Shown: positions 25,799 through 40,852 of the stretch, piece after piece | Position numbering within the stretch: position 1 is the stretch's first letter | Layout of the letters: each line of letters begins with the position of its first letter | NCBI GenBank assembly: GCA_965235115.1 | Contig: OZ249447.1 | Span: 9,114,001-9,178,000 of the forward strand | DNA: 64,000 nt | Source of the DNA: Laetmonice hystrix | Lineage: Eukaryota | Direction: 5' to 3' | Made by a program: the position numbers and the translations under genes | The notes under the pieces: model-generated | What the model saw: the letters and a program-made list of their open reading frames with translations, nothing else | Told to the model about the DNA's origin: nothing | Databases searched by the model: none

Positions 25799-25947
25799 NN
25801 NNNNNNNNNNNNNNNNNNNNNNNNNNNNNNNNNNNNNNNNNNNNNNNNNNNNNNNNNNNNNNNNNNNNNNNNNNNNNNNNNNNNNNNNNNNNNNNNNNNN
25901 NNNNNNNNNNNNNNNNNNNNNNNNNNNNNNNNNNNNNNNNNNNNNNN
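25799..25947. other. Assembly gap (149 N)
   Basis: Run of N. Confidence 1.
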
Positions 25948-31290: not shown

Positions 31291-33844
31291 TAGACTCTAG
31301 TACCTAGATCTTAGACTTGCTCTTTCGTTTTTGACATTTGACGACCGTAGGCCTACTAATATTTTGCGATAGAGTCTAGGCTCGCGTAAAAATAATGACA
31401 TCACTTTTAGAGTCTAACCTCTAATTTTAAACAAATAAAAAAATGGCCAACTTCCAGTTCCAGATTTAGGCCTAACACTAGTAACAGTAACATTACTTAC
31501 TGTATTAATATTGCTATAATACTAGAGTACAAAGGGTAATGTTAGTCTTTTCGATGACCCCCCCCCCCTCAGCGAACCGTACATAACAGAAAAACTCGTG
31601 TTTGGTTTTTTTTTTGCTTAGCTGACGAATTACAGATCGACGTTTTTCACAGTTTTTAAAAAGCGTATGCAGGGAGTGCCAAATCGAGTGACCGAGACAA
31701 CCAAAAAATCGGTCTGGGCAACTGGAATAAGCCGATCAGTTGCCCATTGAACAACTACGTACACTACAGCAATGGCTGTATAAATTATAATACAGTGGTC
31801 ACTAAATTTGTAGCCCGGGACTACCAAAAAATAAAAAACAACCATATTGACAAATTGTGGTTGCCCGGGGGCTACCATTAATGGCATTATTTTGGAAGCA
31901 TTATCCTAACCAACCGACATCATCACCAACATGACTCTGTAGCTAGGTCAGGGATATGCCGTATATATAGTCCCTTTAGCCGCGCATGTGCGTGTGCAGA
32001 AAAGCAGTGCGCGGCAATAGGGAGGTTGCGCCAGGAGCTTACAAAATTTTACACTAGGTGGCGCGTCGAATACGGGTTTCCGGCCCAGTTTGTTTGAAAA
32101 AATGCGGGGGTGCGTGGCAAATAGGTAGTGCGCAGCTAAAGGGACATATACGGTATATAGGATTTCAAGAGGGCATGGCACGCATATCCAAAAACGGGCA
32201 CTGTGATGAAGGGGCATTTGAACACACAAAGTCTTCTAAGGCACAGGGCACAGCCTGGAGATCAATTAACTGCATGTATTGACCAGCTCAAGTACCAGGG
32301 CTTGTCCTTTGAAAAAAGCAGGTGCACAAAATTTTGTGCACCTTGAAAGAGGTAGGCGCGCATTTTTTTTTTGTGCACCTAAAATGTGGTAGGCGCACAA
32401 TTTATTTTTGGGTCAGATGAGGTGTAATAGTGTGTATCCTCGCAAACCCTCACACATCCCATCCGTCTCGACTTCTGTTAATGATCAACCATAGGCACAT
32501 GGTTACTGCCAGGGTACAAGCACATACTGGAAAGGGTTAAGATCTTGCTTGAGCTGAAGCTTAACACTTACAATTGGCTGGTCTCAGCAGACAGCCAATC
32601 AAAAGCTTTTAAAAGTAAGATCTTCAGTTTTTATGAATTGAACCCAGGACTCACATTCTTTTAGGTCACACTTGTTCTGAGGCCATCATCATTGTTCCAA
32701 ATGGACTGAATAGGGCGCCTAAGTATGTCACGAGAATTCAAGAGATTTCGCGTTGTCGGGACAAGGAGCAGATAGCCTCGCTGGTTTAACATTGCGATGG
32801 CCATAGGGAACAGTGACAGTCAACTTTAAAATATTTTCATTCTGCAGTGAAGTCGCTGTTAATATTTAAACGTTACAATACATGATGGCTGGCATGTTTA
32901 CTCTGGGATAAAGTTTGTTTTATAGTTTAGAAAGTTAGATTGTGAATATACGGGCTGGTTTTTGTAAGCCTGTCGGCCCTGTCAATGCTAATCCTATGGG
33001 AAATTTTTTGACGTCACAATCGCATGGCGCACGTTTGGTGCTATCGCGAGCTGGTTTGAGGCTATTTAACGTCATTTGCATAACCAGGTCACGAGACTTA
33101 GGCGCCCTATAAATGAAAAAGACTTGACCTGGTCCCGAGGATGGACAGCACTTGCCGACAGGATGCAGAACCTACAATTTATTACACACACACAAACCAT
33201 ACCACACTCCAGTGCATCACACAAAAAAATGGTAGGAGTGCTAACATTCACACTCCTTAAAGTTAAACTAGTGTCCTGAGTGTGAATAGCACTCCTTAAA
33301 ATCGTACAGCTAAAATTGACAATGAGCTCTGTTAATATTTACGACATTAGTAACCTGAACAGCAAAGAATTTACATGTAGTTTGTACCACATAAAATGAC
33401 TGCTTTCATATTAATTTATAATTTATTGCGAGACTAAGGGGTGCAAGCGCGATCGCGCTCCTTAAACATGATGCACTGACACTGCATGTTTGGTCAGTGT
33501 TCTCGTGTCATTCATTTACTAGAAGCTGTTTCATTGCCCTCATAATATTTTTCTGTGTGGAGCTCTGCAACAAGATCTAAGAACTTTGAAACTTGGTAAC
33601 ATTTTGCCATTAAGTTACCTCCAGAGTCTGGAGTGTACATTGTACTACAACTGATTTGGAAAAAATAACACTGCTAATTTTAAACTTGCAAATTGCAAAA
33701 AAAGATCAATTAACAGGGATTTACAGTACCCTAGTAATATCCCTTGCTGTTTTGATTGGCTTGCTTCTAAAACTAGTGTTGGCAACTGTGGCCTGCTTGG
33801 GACCTTCTTGCAGGTTGCTCCACAGACTGCCGGGTTACCTTGCC

Positions 33845-36800
33845 ATGATGGACCACCGAGACCATGTGAATGTCACAGACACAAATCACGTGATGAGCAC
33901 ATCCATGATTATTGACGATGACCTGTCCGACGAGCCCAGTTCACCTGAAAGCACATTTGATGAATCAGTTCTCCTAGACTCCAGTGTAACTGGCGACGTT
34001 GCTGCTCAATTAGCAGCTGCAGGTGGGTAGAGCAACAGATGCTAAATTGTGAGCCTTAATTTATTATAGGTGTTGACATAAAACACACGTATGATGAACA
34101 ACACATCAATGATGAGTGACGGTCTGAGCGACGATGACAGCTCACCGGAGAGTCCCTCATATGATGAGACTGATCTGCTCAACGCCACTGATGAAGTTAT
34201 GGCACAGCTTGCTGCTGCAGGTTCGTCGAAAATGCATGCATATTTCTGCCGATCAAGCTGCAAAACCATGCATGGATGTTGTATTGTTTCAGAAATGTGA
34301 AAGTACCCGTATTCAAGAAGAATTCAGACTCTTTGATTTCCAGGAAAACAGCATCCACATTCCATCTTTTTGTTGTCCAATATGTAATACCTGTTTTAGT
34401 CACTGGATCAATTGTGAATGTGGATATATGTGTTCATTTTTGGCCAAAATGCTTTCATTTGAATATTTTTCCCTTCTGTTCTAGTTCTTTCTAATTTATT
34501 CTTTATTATCTAGACTAATTCCCAATGTTGTGTGAATTGTAATCATTTCATTTCTTTCTGGGTAAGATATTTCTCATATATTGCTTGCCATAGTTAGTTC
34601 AGTGCACCTGTTTAATTCTAGAGACATCATTGTGTGTTCATTTCTTTCAAAATATCTTAAGTAGTCAGCATTTTATGACAGCTTTGCTTCAGACGGTGAA
34701 CATGAAGGTTGAAATTTGTGAATGGAAACCCGAAAATTGCAAACAAAAGAATTCACATGCTTGGTCTCATCTATACAAATGCCAAGACGAAGTTTTATAT
34801 TTTGGTCTCCAATGCTATCAAGCATGGTTTAATAATGTCAATAAATAAATGAATATTGGTTCTACAGACATGAACATTTTCTACAGATTCACAGATATCC
34901 CCTTTTTGGGGATTGAAATGCCACCAAAAATGCACCAAATTTGTGTCTGAATTTTGAAATTTTCCTACCATTGACCACAAAATCATAAGTTTCAACAGTT
35001 TTGATATTTTCTCCTGATCATGTCTGGTTTCATAATAAAGCTAATGTGAGTACATGTAGGAAAGGCATCATAAAACCAGTTACAACCATAGTTCATGTCC
35101 GTATTCTCACATCTCTGGTTCCAGGGCCAATTGGTGTTGCAGCAGCTGCAGCTATAGCCACCGGTAAAAAGAGGAAAAGGCCTCATTCCTTTGAAACGAA
35201 CCCATCCATACGAAAACGACAACAAACACGGTTATTAAGGTAAGGCTCGATTTGATTTTGTAAACTGTTGACTGCTATTTATTGGATTTCAAGCCTTTAA
35301 ATAATGTCTCTAGTGTTCAAATCCATGACAACAGGTACCTAACTAGATTTACAACTGACTGTTCCAGAAAACTGAAGAACACAATTGACGAGTACACAAC
35401 AAGGGTTGGCCAACAAGCAGTTGTTCTGTGTTGTACTCCAGGAAAGCCAAGCCAGTCATCCCAGTCCTTTAAAGTGTTTGGATCACAACCTTTGGAAAAT
35501 GTTGTAAGTGTTTGAGAAGGAAATAGTCTGAGAAACATCATTTGTAATCATCTAGGTTGTAAAACAGTGAACAAAGCCCCCCCCCCCCCGCCCACACACA
35601 CACACACACACACACACTTTCAAAACTCTTTCCAGGTCCCTGTTCAGTATATACAGCAAATACAACACAGTGAATATGTATGGTATCCTTTTTGTTTGCA
35701 CTATTTCAGTTACGGAACTGTCGGCCAGCAGTCATGCAAGACTTGGAAGCATCTCTTGCCCAGCAGGCGCCGCCAGCACAGCCAGAGAACCCAGCCCTCC
35801 ATGAACTTCCCCCACTTGTCATAGATGGCATCCCCACACCTGTAGATAAAATGACACAGGTGCGTCATACCGTTGCTCTGTCCAGATTTTGAAGTTTTTT
35901 TGCAAGGTCTCAGATTTGGACAATGAGTATTTGGTGTTATTGCATTCTCCCAGAGAATATTTATAATTGGATCGGTGCTGGAGTGGCAGTGGTTTAAAAC
36001 ATGGCTTGACAGGAGTTAAATGAACTAGCTACCAGCTAGTCGAAAGTGAAAGCTCTTGTAAGCAGTCCAATGCCTCAACAATTGCAGGCCTATGCATACC
36101 CATGGCAGCATGTATAACATAGAAACTACATCCAGTCTGCCGACTCAATTAAAATGTATCTTTGGACAAAATTGGTAGCCAAGATATACTCGTTTACTCA
36201 TCCAAAGTCCAAGCTTGGGTAAGTGACATTTACAGAATTTGTCTGGCCCTCGCAGACTGTATTGGTCATATTAGCAGTTGGCAGGTCATTATCCTGTGCA
36301 AAGGTTGGATATCTTAGTGGCCTGAACAGTAATTTTATTGGTTATAAAAGTTTCTGGCCCATAAACTGATAAAGACCGTTGGATCATAATGGGACCCAGT
36401 GGGTCATAATTCCGGCTGGAACTGTATTTACACTTTCAGTATTGGAGTTATCATCTCATGTGTCATAATGATTCATATGCATTAATTATTATATATGACT
36501 GGTATATTAATGAAAATTGTATGAAAATATAATTCAGTAAAACCTAAAGGTGGGGCAGGGAGATCATCCGTGTGGGCACTTGGAGATGGATTGTAGGTGG
36601 GTGGGAGCATTCATCCCGAAAAGTTAGTTTCGAGCCATGCAAAGTAGAGCTAGCATTAAAATTTAACACAGATTTAGGTTTTAGGGATAGGAGCCGTGTC
36701 AGCCATATGGCCACCTTGTATTGCAGGCTCAGCTACGTGCCTTCATCCCCCTGATGCTCAAGTATGCCACTGGACGTGGCAAGCCGTGCTGGGGACGTGA

Positions 36801-39800
36801 TGAGCAACGCCCACCCTGGTGGCCAGCTAACGTTCCATGGGCCAACGTCCGCTCCGATGTTCGCAGTGAAGAACAAAAGCAACAGGTACCAGTCTTTGAG
36901 CAAAGCTTTGAGCCTTGTGTTATCTCTCTCTATCTGTAGGCCCAGCTACGTGCTTTCATCCCAGAGATGCTCAAATACTCAACAGGCCGCAGCAAACCTG
37001 GTTGGGGAAAGCCTGAGTGTCGGCCAATCTGGTGGCCCAACGATGTACCTTGGGCAAATGTCCGCAGTGATGTCCGGTCGGAGGATGAGAAAAAGAAGGT
37101 ATTTGGTGGAAAATGTTTGCAGAGGTGGACTCTCTGCACGTCTGATGTGTTTGTTCACCAGTCTTTGTGGAACCCTTCTTGTGTTTGTTGAATCGTCTTC
37201 AGTTTGATGTGCATCCACCATCAGTTCATTGTCTGCATCCACCTGTCTCTGTATACATGTATACTTATGTAGAATAAGTCCAGACACCATCAGTAGCATC
37301 ACATGCTGGTAGTCGAGTTTTGTTTTAACCAGTGTTTCAATTTGTTTTACACCTGTTTTCCTGTTGCTGTGTATATTGTTTATCCTATGTTTTTTGGCAT
37401 AGATGATGACTCTATTGTCTAGAGTAGCAGTCAGTCTCATCTGTACATGATTCCTTTTGCAACTATGAGTTATTGAGTCAATGAGTTATTATTGTGAGTT
37501 GGCTGCAACACAGTGAACAAATCAGAAAGCAGTGTAAGCCGTTATAACTTATAGACCAACTGGTGTCAATTCTTCTGGAATGGTTATTATAAACCTAGTA
37601 CGTACTTAACGGATGTCATCAGTAATATTGACTTTTAAAAAAGCATGTACTATTTAATGTTACTGACCTCATCTAAAAATTACCTTAGCCCAAGCAAACT
37701 CCACCTTGAAGGTGATGCACTGTGTTCTTCCCACTTTTAAGCCTCCAAATAATTCAGTTTGAGACTTTACTTTTCTCACCAAACAAAGATTAAATCTAAC
37801 AGTTTTCCAGTAGATAATCGTACAATATTAGCAGTAATTGAAGGCCCTATTTGTGCCTATTAACTACCCTACCTGGTAATTTCTAGCCGTAGATATATTG
37901 CAATATATATCGCAACCACAGTTTACTCTTTCCTTTCTAGGTATCTTGGACTCACGCACTCCGCTGCATCGTTAAAAATTGTTACAAACACCATGGACGA
38001 GAAGACCTGCTCCCTGATTTTGATGAAGTTACACTTTCGTCACATGTTCCCGGCCCACAGTATGCCCAGCAGACAATGGTCCAAACAATAAACAATCCAG
38101 ATGGTACTGTGTCCATCATTCAGATAGACACTGGAGATGTCCAAAACCCACAGATGGTCACTTTGGCTGATGGCACACAGGCACAGGTCGTCCACACCGT
38201 TGCTCCAGTAAGTACCGTTTGCAACTGTTTCAGGTAAAATTCAATGATCGATGTATTATTGAATCTGACAGCAATTTTGATATTATTACTGAGGGTAGTG
38301 CCATCACATGCATGATCGGTTTTCTACTATCAAATCTGGCACCAAAAGGACATCATGATATTTTCCATACACAGGGTATTTTGGCCCATGTGTGCACCCC
38401 CCCCCCTTTTTATTAGGGGAAGGAACTTTCCTTTAATATAGGAAAGAAATTGAATATTCCAACCTTTTTCTCTAGCCTATGAAACCTACTTTGTGACTTT
38501 GGTAGTTGCCATCATGTGGATTTGTGTTCTTGAAGTTAAAGACGAAACTGTTCATTCCTTGTGCTAGGGGAAGCAGAATACAAACCTTTCAATACAGAGC
38601 CCTGCTATGTACTGGGCAGTGGCAGGAATCTTTCTTATCCTGAAATAGTGGTAAAAGCAACTGTGCCAGCTTTTCATAATGATAATTTTGGGACTTGAGC
38701 ATGTATCTTTATGCATGAACAAGTGATGCAGGCTCAGTGCAGTCTTCAAGCTATTCTAAGTCCATGGGATGAGAAAAGAACTGGACTGACATTAGCACAT
38801 GTGAACGTTATAATGGTAAACGTGTCTGGTTTCTTCTTACAGACACAAGAGTACTACACACGACATGTAAGTTGCATGTTGTTCAGTTTGTAGTATTGTC
38901 AGTGTAGTGTTTTCCTTGTGTACGTTTTTGTATGTGTTTGTTCCGGCTGTCTCAAAGTCATCTCGAGATCTGAATGGTTGAGAGGCAGTGACATAGGCGG
39001 TTTGTTTCCTTAGATTGTGTTTTTACACGAAGGTGTCCCCTAGAATAAATTCCCTCCTATGAAGACAATTCAGCATGAGCAAGCTGATCTTCCATTCACC
39101 CTACCTTTACCTTTGCAAAGGTTACAAAAAGGTAGTTTTATCACAGAAAAAATCAGAATGCCCTTAATTCAAAAATGCAATTTTTTTTTTAATGTTGAGC
39201 CAGTATAGCAGCACAGAACATGTGGAGAAGGCATTGTCATAATAAGCAGGTTGATGTACTGGCCAGTAGACTGTGAAGTTACTGGCCCTGAATGATCCAT
39301 TGGCCTCAGATTTGGGAGCCTCTGCATGCCTGCTGTATGCACTGAGAGTTGTATGCAGAACTAAAAGTTGGGGTCCAAGAGCATGCGGCATGGCCGGGAT
39401 TGGATAAACAACTGGTCTAATTGTGCCAATGTTTGCAAAAGTAAAGTAAGTGGCCTGTACTGGCCCAACGCCTAAACAAAATAGCTAGGGCCATCAGGCC
39501 AGTGCTAATATCAAGGTCTGCAGAGATTAAAATTGTCTGTATTGTCCAATGTCATGAATGGTAGTGGGAGCGGTTTTTGGAGCATGCTTGTACGGTTTGG
39601 TGAACGCTGTGAAAGTCGGTTGTCAACTGGGTGTGGCCTGGTTTAGTTGTCTTGATAATATCCTTCATCAAAAAAGTACATTTTTCTCTCCCACTCGTGA
39701 TAGTCAGGTTCACGAGGAGCCTTGCAACTAGTAATAGTAATTCAGACAGCTCTCAGTCATTCTACAGAATTATAGGCCTCAGTCAAATATAAAGGTCAAA

Positions 39801-40852
39801 TCCATCTGGCTTTGGTGTTGTAAAATGTGGTTGTGTTTCAGATAAATGGAGTTCACGAAGCCTCCCAGGCAGTACAGACTCTGGCTGAAGTGGCTGCCTC
39901 ACAGCAAGACCTAATAGGACAAGGTAATGTTGCTGTGGAGATCAACAGTGATGCCACTGCCCAGGCTGTTGCAACACTTGCTGAGGCCACAATCAACTCA
40001 GATGGCCAGCTCATCTTAACCTCTGATCCTAATTCATTAGGTGCGTTCACAAATTCACACTTTTAACATTATATTAATATGTAGTATGTAGTTGCACCAG
40101 TAGCACGGAATGCAAAAAGAAACATCTTTTAGGAGGGAATTCACCTTGAAGATAACAGGCACATATTTCATTGGTAGATTATTTTAATGAAGACCTTATC
40201 TTTCATCTAGATCTGTAGTTTCAAACATTTTTAATTTGACTATGAAACTGGTAGACATTTAGATGATGTGACTGTTCTATGCTCCAAAGAATTTGTTAAA
40301 ATCTTAAATTGCACCGGTAGCACTTTTATAAATCAGGCTGATTGGTAATTGTGGTTCTTCACCTTTGGTTCTGATAAAATGAATCGAGTGCTTTGTCTCC
40401 TAAAGTTAAAGTACATTGGACATTGACATTGATGTTGGCATACATAACATAACAGTTGCATGTACCAGAAAGCCATACTGTGCCATCCCTGGTTTGTTAT
40501 GTAAGTTATGGGTGTTTTAAGTTATTGGCTCCTGGTTATTGAAAATGTATAATATATTTTAGGTTGGTATTTCGAGACAGACCCTCCAGATGATAATGTA
40601 CTTTACCATTCTGCCATTTCCACAGGTGGGCAGTTTATTGCAGGTAACGCAGTATCGGGGATGGTGACCATCCCAGTATCAATGTACCAGACCGTCGTCA
40701 CGAGCATAGCACAGCTCCAAGAAAGTCAGCAGCAACAAGCTCAACAAGGAGTACAGATTGCCATGGCCCCTAATTCAGAACCACTGTCTCATAGTGGTGA
40801 GGTTCCAGATGCAACTCATGCTGTGGAGGTAATGACTGTGGAGCAAACATGA
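33845..40852 (+). CDS. NRF1: Nuclear respiratory factor 1 / erect wing / P3A2 transcription factor. Exons 33845-34022 OR 34091-34220; 35125-35239; 35368-35503; 35710-35859; 36727-36885 OR 36940-37098; 37941-38207; optional 38843-38866; 39842-40040; 40626-40852
   Basis: Contains GPIGVAAAAAIATGKKRKRPHSFETNPSIRKRQQTRLLRKLKNTIDEYTTRVGQQAVVL, LPPLVIDGIPTPVDKMTQAQLRAFIP, WWP..VPWANVRSDVR, VSWTHALRCIVKNCYKHHGREDLL and GMVTIPVSMYQTVV, all NRF1/EWG hallmarks. All splice phases are consistent. Confidence 0.97.

What the first reader, a model, noticed from the sequence alone, without database searches (positions are those of the whole stretch)
33845..34220. Second duplicated exon pair: alternative NRF1 N-termini
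Seen: exon A' (acceptor near 33814, ATG 33845, donor after 34022) encodes MMDH...IDDDLSDEPSSPESTFDESVLLDSSVTGDVAAQLAAAG. Exon B' (acceptor 34068-34069, ATG 34091, donor after 34220) encodes MMNNTSMMSDGLSDDDSSPESPSYDETDLLNATDEVMAQLAAAG. Both end in phase 1 at the same AQLAAAG codon and fit exon 35125. The spacer is 47 nt. Joining A' to B' shifts the frame to a TGA, and retaining the spacer gives TAG at 34028-34030, so only one can be used productively. Known: this acidic Ser-rich N-terminal region of vertebrate NRF1 carries phosphorylation sites that modulate DNA binding. Inference: the regulatory N-terminus is switched alongside the DNA-binding exon.
Basis: partly seen in the sequence, partly recalled or inferred. 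Interest (0 to 1): 0.75.

Follow-up and report, generated by a model that had tools for sequence, protein, structure and literature searches.

The report
Two alternative start exons in NRF1
This invertebrate's NRF1 gene (a master regulator of mitochondrial genes) carries two neighbouring, related copies of its first coding exon, both kept intact by selection, so it probably makes two versions of the protein's regulatory front end, although no RNA data exist to show it.

Summary
Exon A' runs 33814-34022 (ATG 33845). Exon B' runs 34070-34220 (ATG 34091). They are homologous copies of the first coding exon of an NRF1 orthologue, 47 nt apart. Both end in phase 1 at ...AQLAAAG and both fit exon 2 (35125). 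Using both, or retaining the spacer, gives an early stop.

Neither copy looks decayed:
- Both score like real NRF1 N-termini against a profile of 53 orthologues (54 and 59 bits; shuffles at most 6).
- Between the copies, synonymous sites are near saturation (pS 0.69, pN 0.285, dN/dS about 0.19).
- A related genome (an ENA contig) has a B' orthologue with 40/44 identical residues, and the similarity stops at the donor.
- The B' acceptor and start of its 5'UTR match an annelid-like locus at 17 of 18 bases.

Seven other lophotrochozoan NRF1 genes have a single first coding exon, so the pair is lineage-restricted.

No RNA runs exist for this organism. Usage, mutual exclusivity and any coupling to the DNA-binding exon pair are therefore untested. 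Two UGCAUG motifs just after the weak B' donor suggest Rbfox-type regulation.

The scan had already noted the DNA-binding exon pair of this gene.

The parts
33814..34022 (+). Exon 1A': acceptor AG at 33812-33813, 31 nt of 5'UTR, ATG at 33845, 59 codons plus 1 base, donor CAG|GTGGGT
   Evidence: No in-frame ATG lies upstream in the open frame. Profile score 54.0 bits. One heterozygous SNP at 33976, synonymous.
34023..34069 (+). 47-nt spacer between the A' donor and the B' acceptor. It contains TAG at 34028-34030 and the motif AGCAACAG...TGAGCCTT, also present in the 54-nt spacer of the DNA-binding exon pair.
34070..34220 (+). Exon 1B': 21 nt of 5'UTR, ATG at 34091, 43 codons plus 1 base, weak donor CAG|GTTCGT. 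The exon is 151 nt, so using it together with A' shifts the frame.
   Evidence: Profile score 58.9 bits. Orthologue P0272 in a related genome is 40/44 identical. AGGTGTTGACATAAAACA at 34068-34085 matches 17/18 in the annelid-like locus L004.
34233..34274 (+). Two UGCAUG elements (34233-34238 and 34269-34274), 13 and 49 nt downstream of the B' donor. Candidate Rbfox-type intronic enhancer.
   Evidence: the + strand rate in the window is about 1 per 2.4 kb. My estimate of the chance of two or more in 60 nt is about 3e-4.
35125..35239 (+). Exon 2 (GPIGVAAAAAIATGKKRKRPHSFETNPSIRKRQQTRLL-), the common partner for both donors.
   Evidence: 92-97% identical to exon 2 of relatives.
36727..37098 (+). 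Context: the second duplicated pair, DNA-binding exons 5A (36727-36885) and 5B (36940-37098), 159 nt each, with a 54-nt spacer.
   Evidence: In Lineus longissimus, RefSeq isoforms X1 and X2 differ only by this exon.

Best explanation
A' and B' are two functional, alternative versions of the first coding exon of NRF1. They arose by tandem duplication within this animal's lineage. Each mRNA uses one of them.

Each exon brings its own start codon and its own version of two features: the acidic, serine-rich segment that CK2 phosphorylates in vertebrates, and the first residues of the dimerisation domain. Each then splices to exon 2 at 35125. The result is two NRF1 proteins that differ only in the first 44 or 60 residues.

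Shown:
- homology of the two exons;
- intact start codons, reading frames and splice sites;
- the same end phase;
- joint use is unproductive;
- purifying selection averaged over both copies;
- strong conservation of B' in a related genome.

Inferred:
- A non-coding upstream exon splices to either acceptor.
- The 47-nt spacer is too short to be removed as an intron, and the frameshift disposes of any double inclusion.
- A' is the default, because it has the stronger donor and the first acceptor.
- B' has a weak donor, GTTCGT, and is switched on in some tissues through the two UGCAUG elements just downstream, which would be Rbfox-type activation.
For: - Anatomy and frames.
- The gene is NRF1. 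DNA-binding exon 5B matches PDB 8k3d at E = 1.7e-28, and all exons align to Lineus NRF1.
- Both exons score within the range of true orthologous N-termini: 54.0 and 58.9 bits, against an orthologue median of 62.9, a 25th percentile of 55.4 and shuffles of at most 6.4.
- Between the copies pS = 0.69 and pN = 0.285, so dN/dS is about 0.19. Third-position identity is 43%, the same as in the old DNA-binding pair. If one copy had been neutral since the duplication, pN should be at least about 0.53.
- Relative (ENA ERZ26222911, 515-kb contig): P0272 is 40/44 identical to B', and the similarity ends exactly at the donor. A 60-codon + strand ORF ends 59 nt before its ATG. In the window the A' ORF has 61 codons and ends 60 nt before the B' ATG. 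The downstream ORFs mirror the gene, including a 129-codon Nrf1_DNA-bind ORF of a size that fits the two DNA-binding exons plus an open in-frame spacer.
- The B' acceptor and start of its 5'UTR match the annelid-like locus L004 at 17 of 18 bases.
- The only heterozygous variant in the 407-nt A'-spacer-B' block is synonymous. At the intron rate 4.3 variants would be expected (P = 0.07).
- Two UGCAUG motifs lie 13 and 49 nt after the B' donor. The positional rule for Rbfox is in PMC11874969.
- Frameshift and branch-point proximity are the recognised ways of enforcing exclusivity (PMC5740500).
- The same gene's DNA-binding pair, with the same short-spacer design, is annotated as alternative isoforms in Lineus.
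Against: - There is no transcript evidence at all. No RNA run holds the locus. Degenerate searches for the spliced junctions in JGI metagenome contigs found nothing.
- The upstream exon or promoter is unknown. A high-copy repeat lies 540 nt upstream of A'.
- The A' orthologue in the relative is inferred only from the position and length of an ORF. Its sequence could not be read, and it shared too few 5-residue words with A' to be picked up. A' therefore probably evolves faster than B'.
- Seven other lophotrochozoan NRF1 genes manage with one first coding exon.
- 42 aligned codons give a wide error on dN/dS.
- The minimum intron length for this species is not known, so steric exclusion at 47 nt is an assumption.
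- Rbfox dependence rests on motif counts only.
Confidence: 0.62

Rival explanations
1. Only B' makes protein. A' is a younger duplicate that is never spliced productively, or is no longer. It is either a relic or a 5'UTR exon or upstream ORF that dampens translation of NRF1.
For: - B' carries the ancestral acceptor and 5'UTR and is 91% conserved in the relative.
- The A' orthologue was not recovered by the word-based search that found B'.
- A' has lost the residue matching human Ser52 and has Val where nearly all orthologues have Asp in SDLL.
Against: - A' keeps its ATG, an open frame, a near-consensus donor in the family's phase, and a profile score of 54 bits.
- pN between the copies is far below the value expected if one copy had been neutral.
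- An ORF of matching length and position persists in a relative whose adjacent intron no longer resembles the window's, as judged from the read-through translation.
Confidence: 0.15
2. Both exons are used, but as alternative first exons driven by two promoters. There would be no choice of acceptor from a shared upstream exon. Exclusivity would then follow from where transcription starts, not from splicing.
For: - Each exon has its own short 5'UTR and ATG.
- No upstream exon could be identified.
- The conserved block at the start of B' could be a promoter-proximal element rather than an acceptor.
Against: - A B' promoter would have to sit inside the A' coding exon and the 47-nt spacer.
- Both exons are preceded by pyrimidine-rich tracts ending in AG at aligned positions.
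- Lineus NRF1 has four RefSeq protein records with the same sequence, which may reflect transcripts differing in non-coding exons.
Confidence: 0.15
3. Only A' is used and B' is a silent remnant.
For: A' comes first and has the stronger donor.
Against: B' is 40/44 identical in a relative, with conservation ending at the splice donor. It has the higher profile score, an acceptor shared with an annelid-like locus and no variants in the sequenced individual.
Confidence: 0.04

Closest known systems
First coding exon of vertebrate NRF1 (human residues 1-75: CK2-phosphorylated acidic serine cluster plus the start of the dimerisation domain)
   Same: Same motif order (S-x-D/E cluster, SSPE, (F/Y)D(D/E)xDLL, D(D/E)V-x-AQLAAAG). 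Same exon end in phase 1 before PxGxAAAAA. Three S/T-x-x-D/E sites in each copy. CK2 phosphorylation of this region enhances DNA binding (PMC10810270).
   Different: There are two copies here, not one. A' lacks the residue matching Ser52 and has Val for the Asp of SDLL. B' is two residues shorter in the stretch that aligns with human residues 60-67, which lie inside the crystallised dimerisation domain (residues 54-172). Phosphorylation was not tested.
DNA-binding exon pair 5A/5B of the same gene (earlier finding s1-327597; Lineus longissimus RefSeq isoforms X1/X2)
   Same: Tandem homologous exons separated by about 50 nt, saturated synonymous sites, and a shared spacer motif in this genome.
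   Different: The 5A/5B pair is old: both exons are also present in Lineus, L004, L012 and L016. It is in-frame if both exons are included (159 nt each), and in Lineus it is annotated as alternative RefSeq isoforms. The N-terminal pair is lineage-restricted, contains the start codons, shifts the frame on joint inclusion and has no transcript support.
Mutually exclusive exons from tandem exon duplication, enforced by frameshift/NMD or by branch-point proximity (Hatje et al. 2017, PMC5740500; alpha-tropomyosin exons 2/3, from my own knowledge)
   Same: Adjacent homologous exons, the same phase, joint inclusion giving a premature stop, and a very short intervening intron.
   Different: The defining splice-junction evidence is missing. 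The exons hold the initiation codon, so the 5' partner is non-coding and unknown.
C. elegans unc-32, a gene with two separately regulated sets of mutually exclusive exons (PMC3585155, abstract only)
   Same: One gene with two clusters of alternative homologous exons.
   Different: Regulators and tissue patterns are known there and unknown here. The gene family is unrelated.

Membership tests
NRF1/EWG/P3A2 N-terminal exon | Sequence homology to the N-terminal acidic Ser-rich segment of NRF1 orthologues | tested here: met
   Profile of 53 orthologues: A' 54.0 bits, B' 58.9 bits, shuffles at most 6.4. tblastn of orthologue N-termini against the window: 1e-8 to 1e-12 for both.
NRF1/EWG/P3A2 N-terminal exon | Exon ends in phase 1 at ...QLAAAG and reads into the PIGVAAAAA/NLS exon | tested here: met
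   In-silico joins A'+exon 2 and B'+exon 2 are both open and give AAAGPIGVAAAAAIATGKKRKRP.
NRF1/EWG/P3A2 N-terminal exon | Lies in a gene that encodes the Nrf1 DNA-binding domain | tested here: met
   Exon 5B against PDB 8k3d/8k4l, E = 1.7e-28. All downstream exons align to Lineus NRF1.
NRF1/EWG/P3A2 N-terminal exon | Serines phosphorylated by CK2, with an effect on DNA binding | not testable with these tools
   Only motifs can be counted: three S/T-x-x-D/E sites in each copy, at different positions.
Mutually exclusive exon pair (tandem exon duplication) | Adjacent homologous exons with compatible phase towards the shared flanking exon | tested here: met
Mutually exclusive exon pair (tandem exon duplication) | Joint inclusion prevented or made unproductive | tested here: met
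   B' is 151 nt. A'+B'+exon 2 stops at TGA, and a retained spacer stops at TAG 34028-34030. Steric exclusion by the 47-nt spacer is inferred, not tested.
Mutually exclusive exon pair (tandem exon duplication) | Splice-junction reads from each exon to the flanking exons, with none joining the two | not testable with these tools
   No RNA run holds the locus. X1-X3 are genomic DNA with no splice joints. Junction patterns are absent from JGI metagenome contigs.
Mutually exclusive exon pair (tandem exon duplication) | B' kept by selection in relatives | tested here: met
   P0272 is 40/44 identical, and similarity ends at the donor.
Mutually exclusive exon pair (tandem exon duplication) | A' kept by selection in relatives | tested here: inconclusive
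   A 60-codon ORF ends 59 nt before the B' ATG in the relative, against 61 codons and 60 nt here. Its sequence was not obtainable. Pairwise dN/dS of 0.19 argues for constraint on both copies.
Rbfox-activated exon | (U)GCAUG in the proximal downstream intron | tested here: met
   UGCAUG at +13 and +49 after the B' donor.
Rbfox-activated exon | Motif conserved in relatives; inclusion depends on Rbfox | tested here: inconclusive
   The relative's read-through peptide ...G LSQAC implies GCNTG at intron +12 to +16, with the middle base unknown. The Fox-1_C search of the genome was uninformative. Dependence cannot be tested here.

The most novel reading that the evidence does not exclude
The N-terminal pair and the DNA-binding pair are chosen in a coordinated way, through the element AGCAACAG...TGAGCCTT that both spacers share. 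One gene would then yield two discrete NRF1 'paralogue-like' proteins, each with its own phospho-regulatory and dimerisation start and its own DNA-reading exon, instead of four random combinations. The N-terminal spacer may even have been copied from the DNA-binding spacer, which would make a portable 'mutual-exclusion module'.
Probability: 0.1. Interest if true: 0.75.

Novelty: new member of a known kind. Interest (0 to 1): 0.45.

Why it matters
NRF1 is a central activator of nuclear genes for mitochondrial function, and it is usually treated as a single-product gene. Its N-terminus tunes DNA binding through CK2 phosphorylation.

A lineage that keeps two alternative N-termini, on top of two alternative DNA-binding exons, could make up to four NRF1 proteins from one locus. 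That would offer a natural experiment on what the N-terminal segment does. It would also give a compact example of two short-spacer exon pairs in one gene for studying how exclusive splicing is enforced and coordinated.

It is nonetheless a new instance of a well-known evolutionary mechanism, and its expression is still unproven.

Tried and rejected
- RNA evidence. The look-up of sequencing runs found only three runs of one sample and none on record as RNA. Laid on 32700-38400 they behave as genomic DNA, with even depth over introns and no splice joints.
- Spliced junctions. Degenerate patterns for A'-exon 2 and B'-exon 2 in JGI metagenome contigs gave 0 hits each.
- The A' orthologue in the relative. 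The ENA sample file is too large, so no DNA was served. The profile search with A'+B' returned only the B' orthologue.
- A closer relative through exon 6. The best hits are 74-77% identical and have a single N-terminal exon.
- The pair in other genomes. It is absent from Lineus (L003), Tubulanus (L014) and the unnamed loci L004/L005, L011, L012, L015 and L016.
- Solved structures. PDB sequence searches with A' or B' alone gave no hits, because the overlap with the crystallised fragment is too short.
- Rbfox in this genome. A search of G000 with Fox-1_C (PF12414) found nothing, the controls were silent too, and the result is uninformative.
- The genome search 'relatives' is not available for this genome.
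- Literature. No paper describing mutually exclusive exons in NRF1 turned up among the 15 best-ranked papers of one full-text search.
- Assembly artefact or paralogue: rejected.
- Pairing between the spacer/B' acceptor and the exon 2 donor is kept only as a lead. It has no obvious role in exon choice, and its statistical support is modest and post hoc.

Full report
**What is there.** The window holds an NRF1 orthologue on the + strand.
- The exon at 36940-37098 matches the DNA-binding domain of human NRF1 in PDB 8k3d at E = 1.7e-28.
- All exons align to NRF1 of the ribbon worm Lineus longissimus, the most similar named protein.
- A protein tree places the gene among lophotrochozoans without resolving its phylum.
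- The host genome has 627 Mb in 35 contigs and only this one NRF1 locus.

My exon table:

| Exon | Coordinates |
|---|---|
| 1A' | 33814-34022 (ATG 33845) |
| spacer | 47 nt |
| 1B' | 34070-34220 (ATG 34091) |
| 2 | 35125-35239 |
| 3 | 35368-35503 |
| 4 | 35710-35859 |
| 5A | 36727-36885 |
| spacer | 54 nt |
| 5B | 36940-37098 |
| 6 | 37941-38207 |

Two more exons lie near 39836 and 40628.

**Check of the observation.**
- Both exons end with one base of a Gly codon after ...AQLAAA, and both read on as AAAGPIGVAAAAA in exon 2.
- A' followed by B' runs into TGA. A retained spacer gives TAG at 34028-34030.
- No in-frame ATG lies upstream of 33845 in the open frame.
- The two peptides are homologous (BLASTP E = 9e-5, 17/30 identical in the core).
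- Each peptide is about as similar to the N-terminal exons of annelid, nemertean, mollusc and hemichordate NRF1 (48-66%) as the two are to each other.
- Single DNA contigs from three runs cross both exons, so the pair is not an assembly artefact.

**Is either copy decayed?** I built a profile from 53 non-redundant N-terminal segments of NRF1 proteins returned by the searches. Its consensus is ...MSDDMSDPSSPESASFDDSDLLNSAVTDDVTAQLAAAG. A' scores 54.0 and B' 58.9 bits. The orthologue median is 62.9, the 25th percentile is 55.4, and shuffles of A' and B' score at most 6.4.

A codon comparison of the 42 alignable codons gives pS = 0.69 and pN = 0.285, so dN/dS is about 0.19. Third-position identity is 43%, the same as for the 5A/5B pair (41.5%), which is old. 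Synonymous sites are therefore close to saturation while the protein is conserved. Had one copy drifted neutrally since the duplication, pN should be at least about 0.53.

In the sequenced individual the 407-nt block of A', spacer and B' carries one heterozygous variant, a synonymous CTA>CTG in A'. At the intron rate 4.3 would be expected (P = 0.07). All four exonic variants of the gene are synonymous. This is weak support on its own.

**Relatives.** A profile search with A'+B' over the 5.8-billion-protein collection returned one protein, P0272 (54 aa). It comes from a 515-kb ENA contig.
- Its first 44 residues are 40/44 identical to B'. Similarity ends exactly at the donor (LSQACRRLHK against SSKMHAYFCR), as expected for an exon under selection next to a diverged intron.
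- A 60-codon + strand ORF ends 59 nt before the B' ATG. In the window the A' ORF has 61 codons and ends 60 nt before the B' ATG.
- The ORFs further downstream fit exon 2 and, through a 129-codon Nrf1_DNA-bind ORF, the 5A-spacer-5B block.
- I take this as good but indirect evidence that A' is also kept in that relative.
- The ORF was not picked up by the word-based search, which suggests that A' changes faster than B'.

The first 18 bases at the B' acceptor (AGGTGTTGACATAAAACA, 34068-34085) recur at 17/18 in the annelid-like locus L004, 81 nt upstream of its start codon. B' therefore carries the ancestral 5' end.

I found only one first coding exon in these loci:
- Lineus (L003);
- Tubulanus (L014);
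- the unnamed lophotrochozoan loci L004/L005, L011, L012, L015 and L016.

The N-terminal duplication is thus confined to the window's lineage, unlike the 5A/5B pair. That pair is also present in Lineus, L004, L012 and L016. In Lineus it accounts for the only difference between RefSeq isoforms X1 and X2.

**How it probably works.** Shown: only one of the two exons can be used productively per mRNA, because B' is 151 nt and the spacer holds a stop.

Inferred:
- Exclusivity is enforced by the frameshift and by the 47-nt spacer being too short for the A' donor and the B' branch point to be used together. These are two of the recognised mechanisms for mutually exclusive exons (PMC5740500).
- A' has a near-consensus donor (CAG|GTGGGT).
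- B' has the weakest donor of the gene (CAG|GTTCGT).
- B' is followed by UGCAUG at +13 and +49. The + strand of the window has about one such hexamer per 2.4 kb, so two in 60 nt has a chance of roughly 3e-4.
- GCAUG downstream of an exon usually enhances its inclusion through Rbfox proteins, which are conserved from nematodes to humans (PMC11874969).

I therefore propose A' as the default exon and B' as an exon activated in Rbfox-expressing tissues. This is a hypothesis built on motifs.

The upstream partner is unknown, whether a leader exon or a promoter. A very high-copy repeat occupies 32700-33270.

**What would differ between the proteins.** Both copies keep the SSPE core and three S/T-x-x-D/E sites, but at different positions.

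I aligned them by eye to a mammalian NRF1 from the searches (P0263). The human site numbering is from my own knowledge.
- B' keeps the Ser-Tyr matching Ser52-Tyr53.
- A' has Thr-Phe there and Val in place of the Asp of SDLL.
- B' is two residues shorter in the stretch matching human residues 60-67.

Human residues 54-75, the last 22 residues of this exon, belong to the crystallised dimerisation domain (residues 54-172). CK2 phosphorylation of the N-terminus is reported to enhance DNA binding (PMC10810270). The switch could therefore change both phospho-regulation and the start of the dimerisation domain. None of this was tested.

**Coupling to the DNA-binding exon.** Nothing here tests it. The only hint is that both spacers share AGCAACAG...TGAGCCTT in the same order. 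The DNA-binding spacers of Lineus, L004 and L012 lack it. That motif is the subject of another note of the scan (s1-327625).

**Novelty and verdict.** The 15 best-ranked papers of one full-text search for NRF1 with mutually exclusive exons described no such exons.

The finding is a real tandem duplication of the first coding exon of NRF1. It is most likely functional, and it is a new instance of a well-known mechanism. Its expression, tissue pattern and any coordination with the DNA-binding pair remain to be shown.

I put the probability that both exons are used as alternatives at about 0.6-0.75, depending on whether the two-promoter variant is counted. Interest is moderate.

Noticed in passing
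window 34233-34238 and 34269-34274: Two UGCAUG hexamers lie 13 and 49 nt downstream of the weak B' donor. In the relative, the read-through peptide after AAAG (LSQAC) implies GCNTG at nearly the same offset.
   Followed up: partly
window 34031-34058 and 36878-36916: Both inter-duplicate spacers share AGCAACAG...TGAGCCTT in the same order. In the DNA-binding pair, AGCAACAG is the end of exon 5A. The DNA-binding spacers of Lineus (L003), L004 and L012 lack the motif.
   Followed up: partly
window 34051-34074 vs 35225-35248: This is the longest inverted repeat in 33600-37300. The end of the spacer plus the B' acceptor can pair with the end of exon 2 plus its donor (18/24; RNAduplex -25.5 kcal/mol; 1 of 200 shuffles as low). 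No obvious role.
   Followed up: partly
window 34068-34085; L004 4488-4505: An 18-nt block at the B' acceptor and start of its 5'UTR (AGGTGTTGACATAAAACA) is conserved at 17/18 in an annelid-like NRF1 locus, 81 nt upstream of its ATG. It is not found in Lineus, Tubulanus, L011, L012, L015 or L016.
   Followed up: partly
window 33446-33459: Perfect 14-nt palindrome AGCGCGATCGCGCT, about 355 nt upstream of the A' acceptor. It is GC-rich and could be a promoter element.
   Followed up: no
window 32700-33270: Very high-copy repeat: contig depth of 1e4-1e5 against about 45 elsewhere. It lies directly upstream of the NRF1 first coding exons.
   Followed up: no
L004 4623-4843; L016 4123-4356: In two annelid-like relatives, exon 1 and exon 2 are fused, so the intron after ...AAG is lost.
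   Followed up: no
L011 10332-10688: Four to five tandem partial copies of the 3' end of NRF1 exon 6 (IDTGDMGQPQIVTLADGTQA...) follow the exon in this relative.
   Followed up: no
L014 (Tubulanus), L011, L015: tblastn found only a 5B-type DNA-binding exon in these relatives. Lineus, L004, L012 and L016 keep both 5A and 5B, with spacers of 44-53 nt.
   Followed up: partly
window 25799-25947: Run of 149 N (gap or masked).
   Followed up: no
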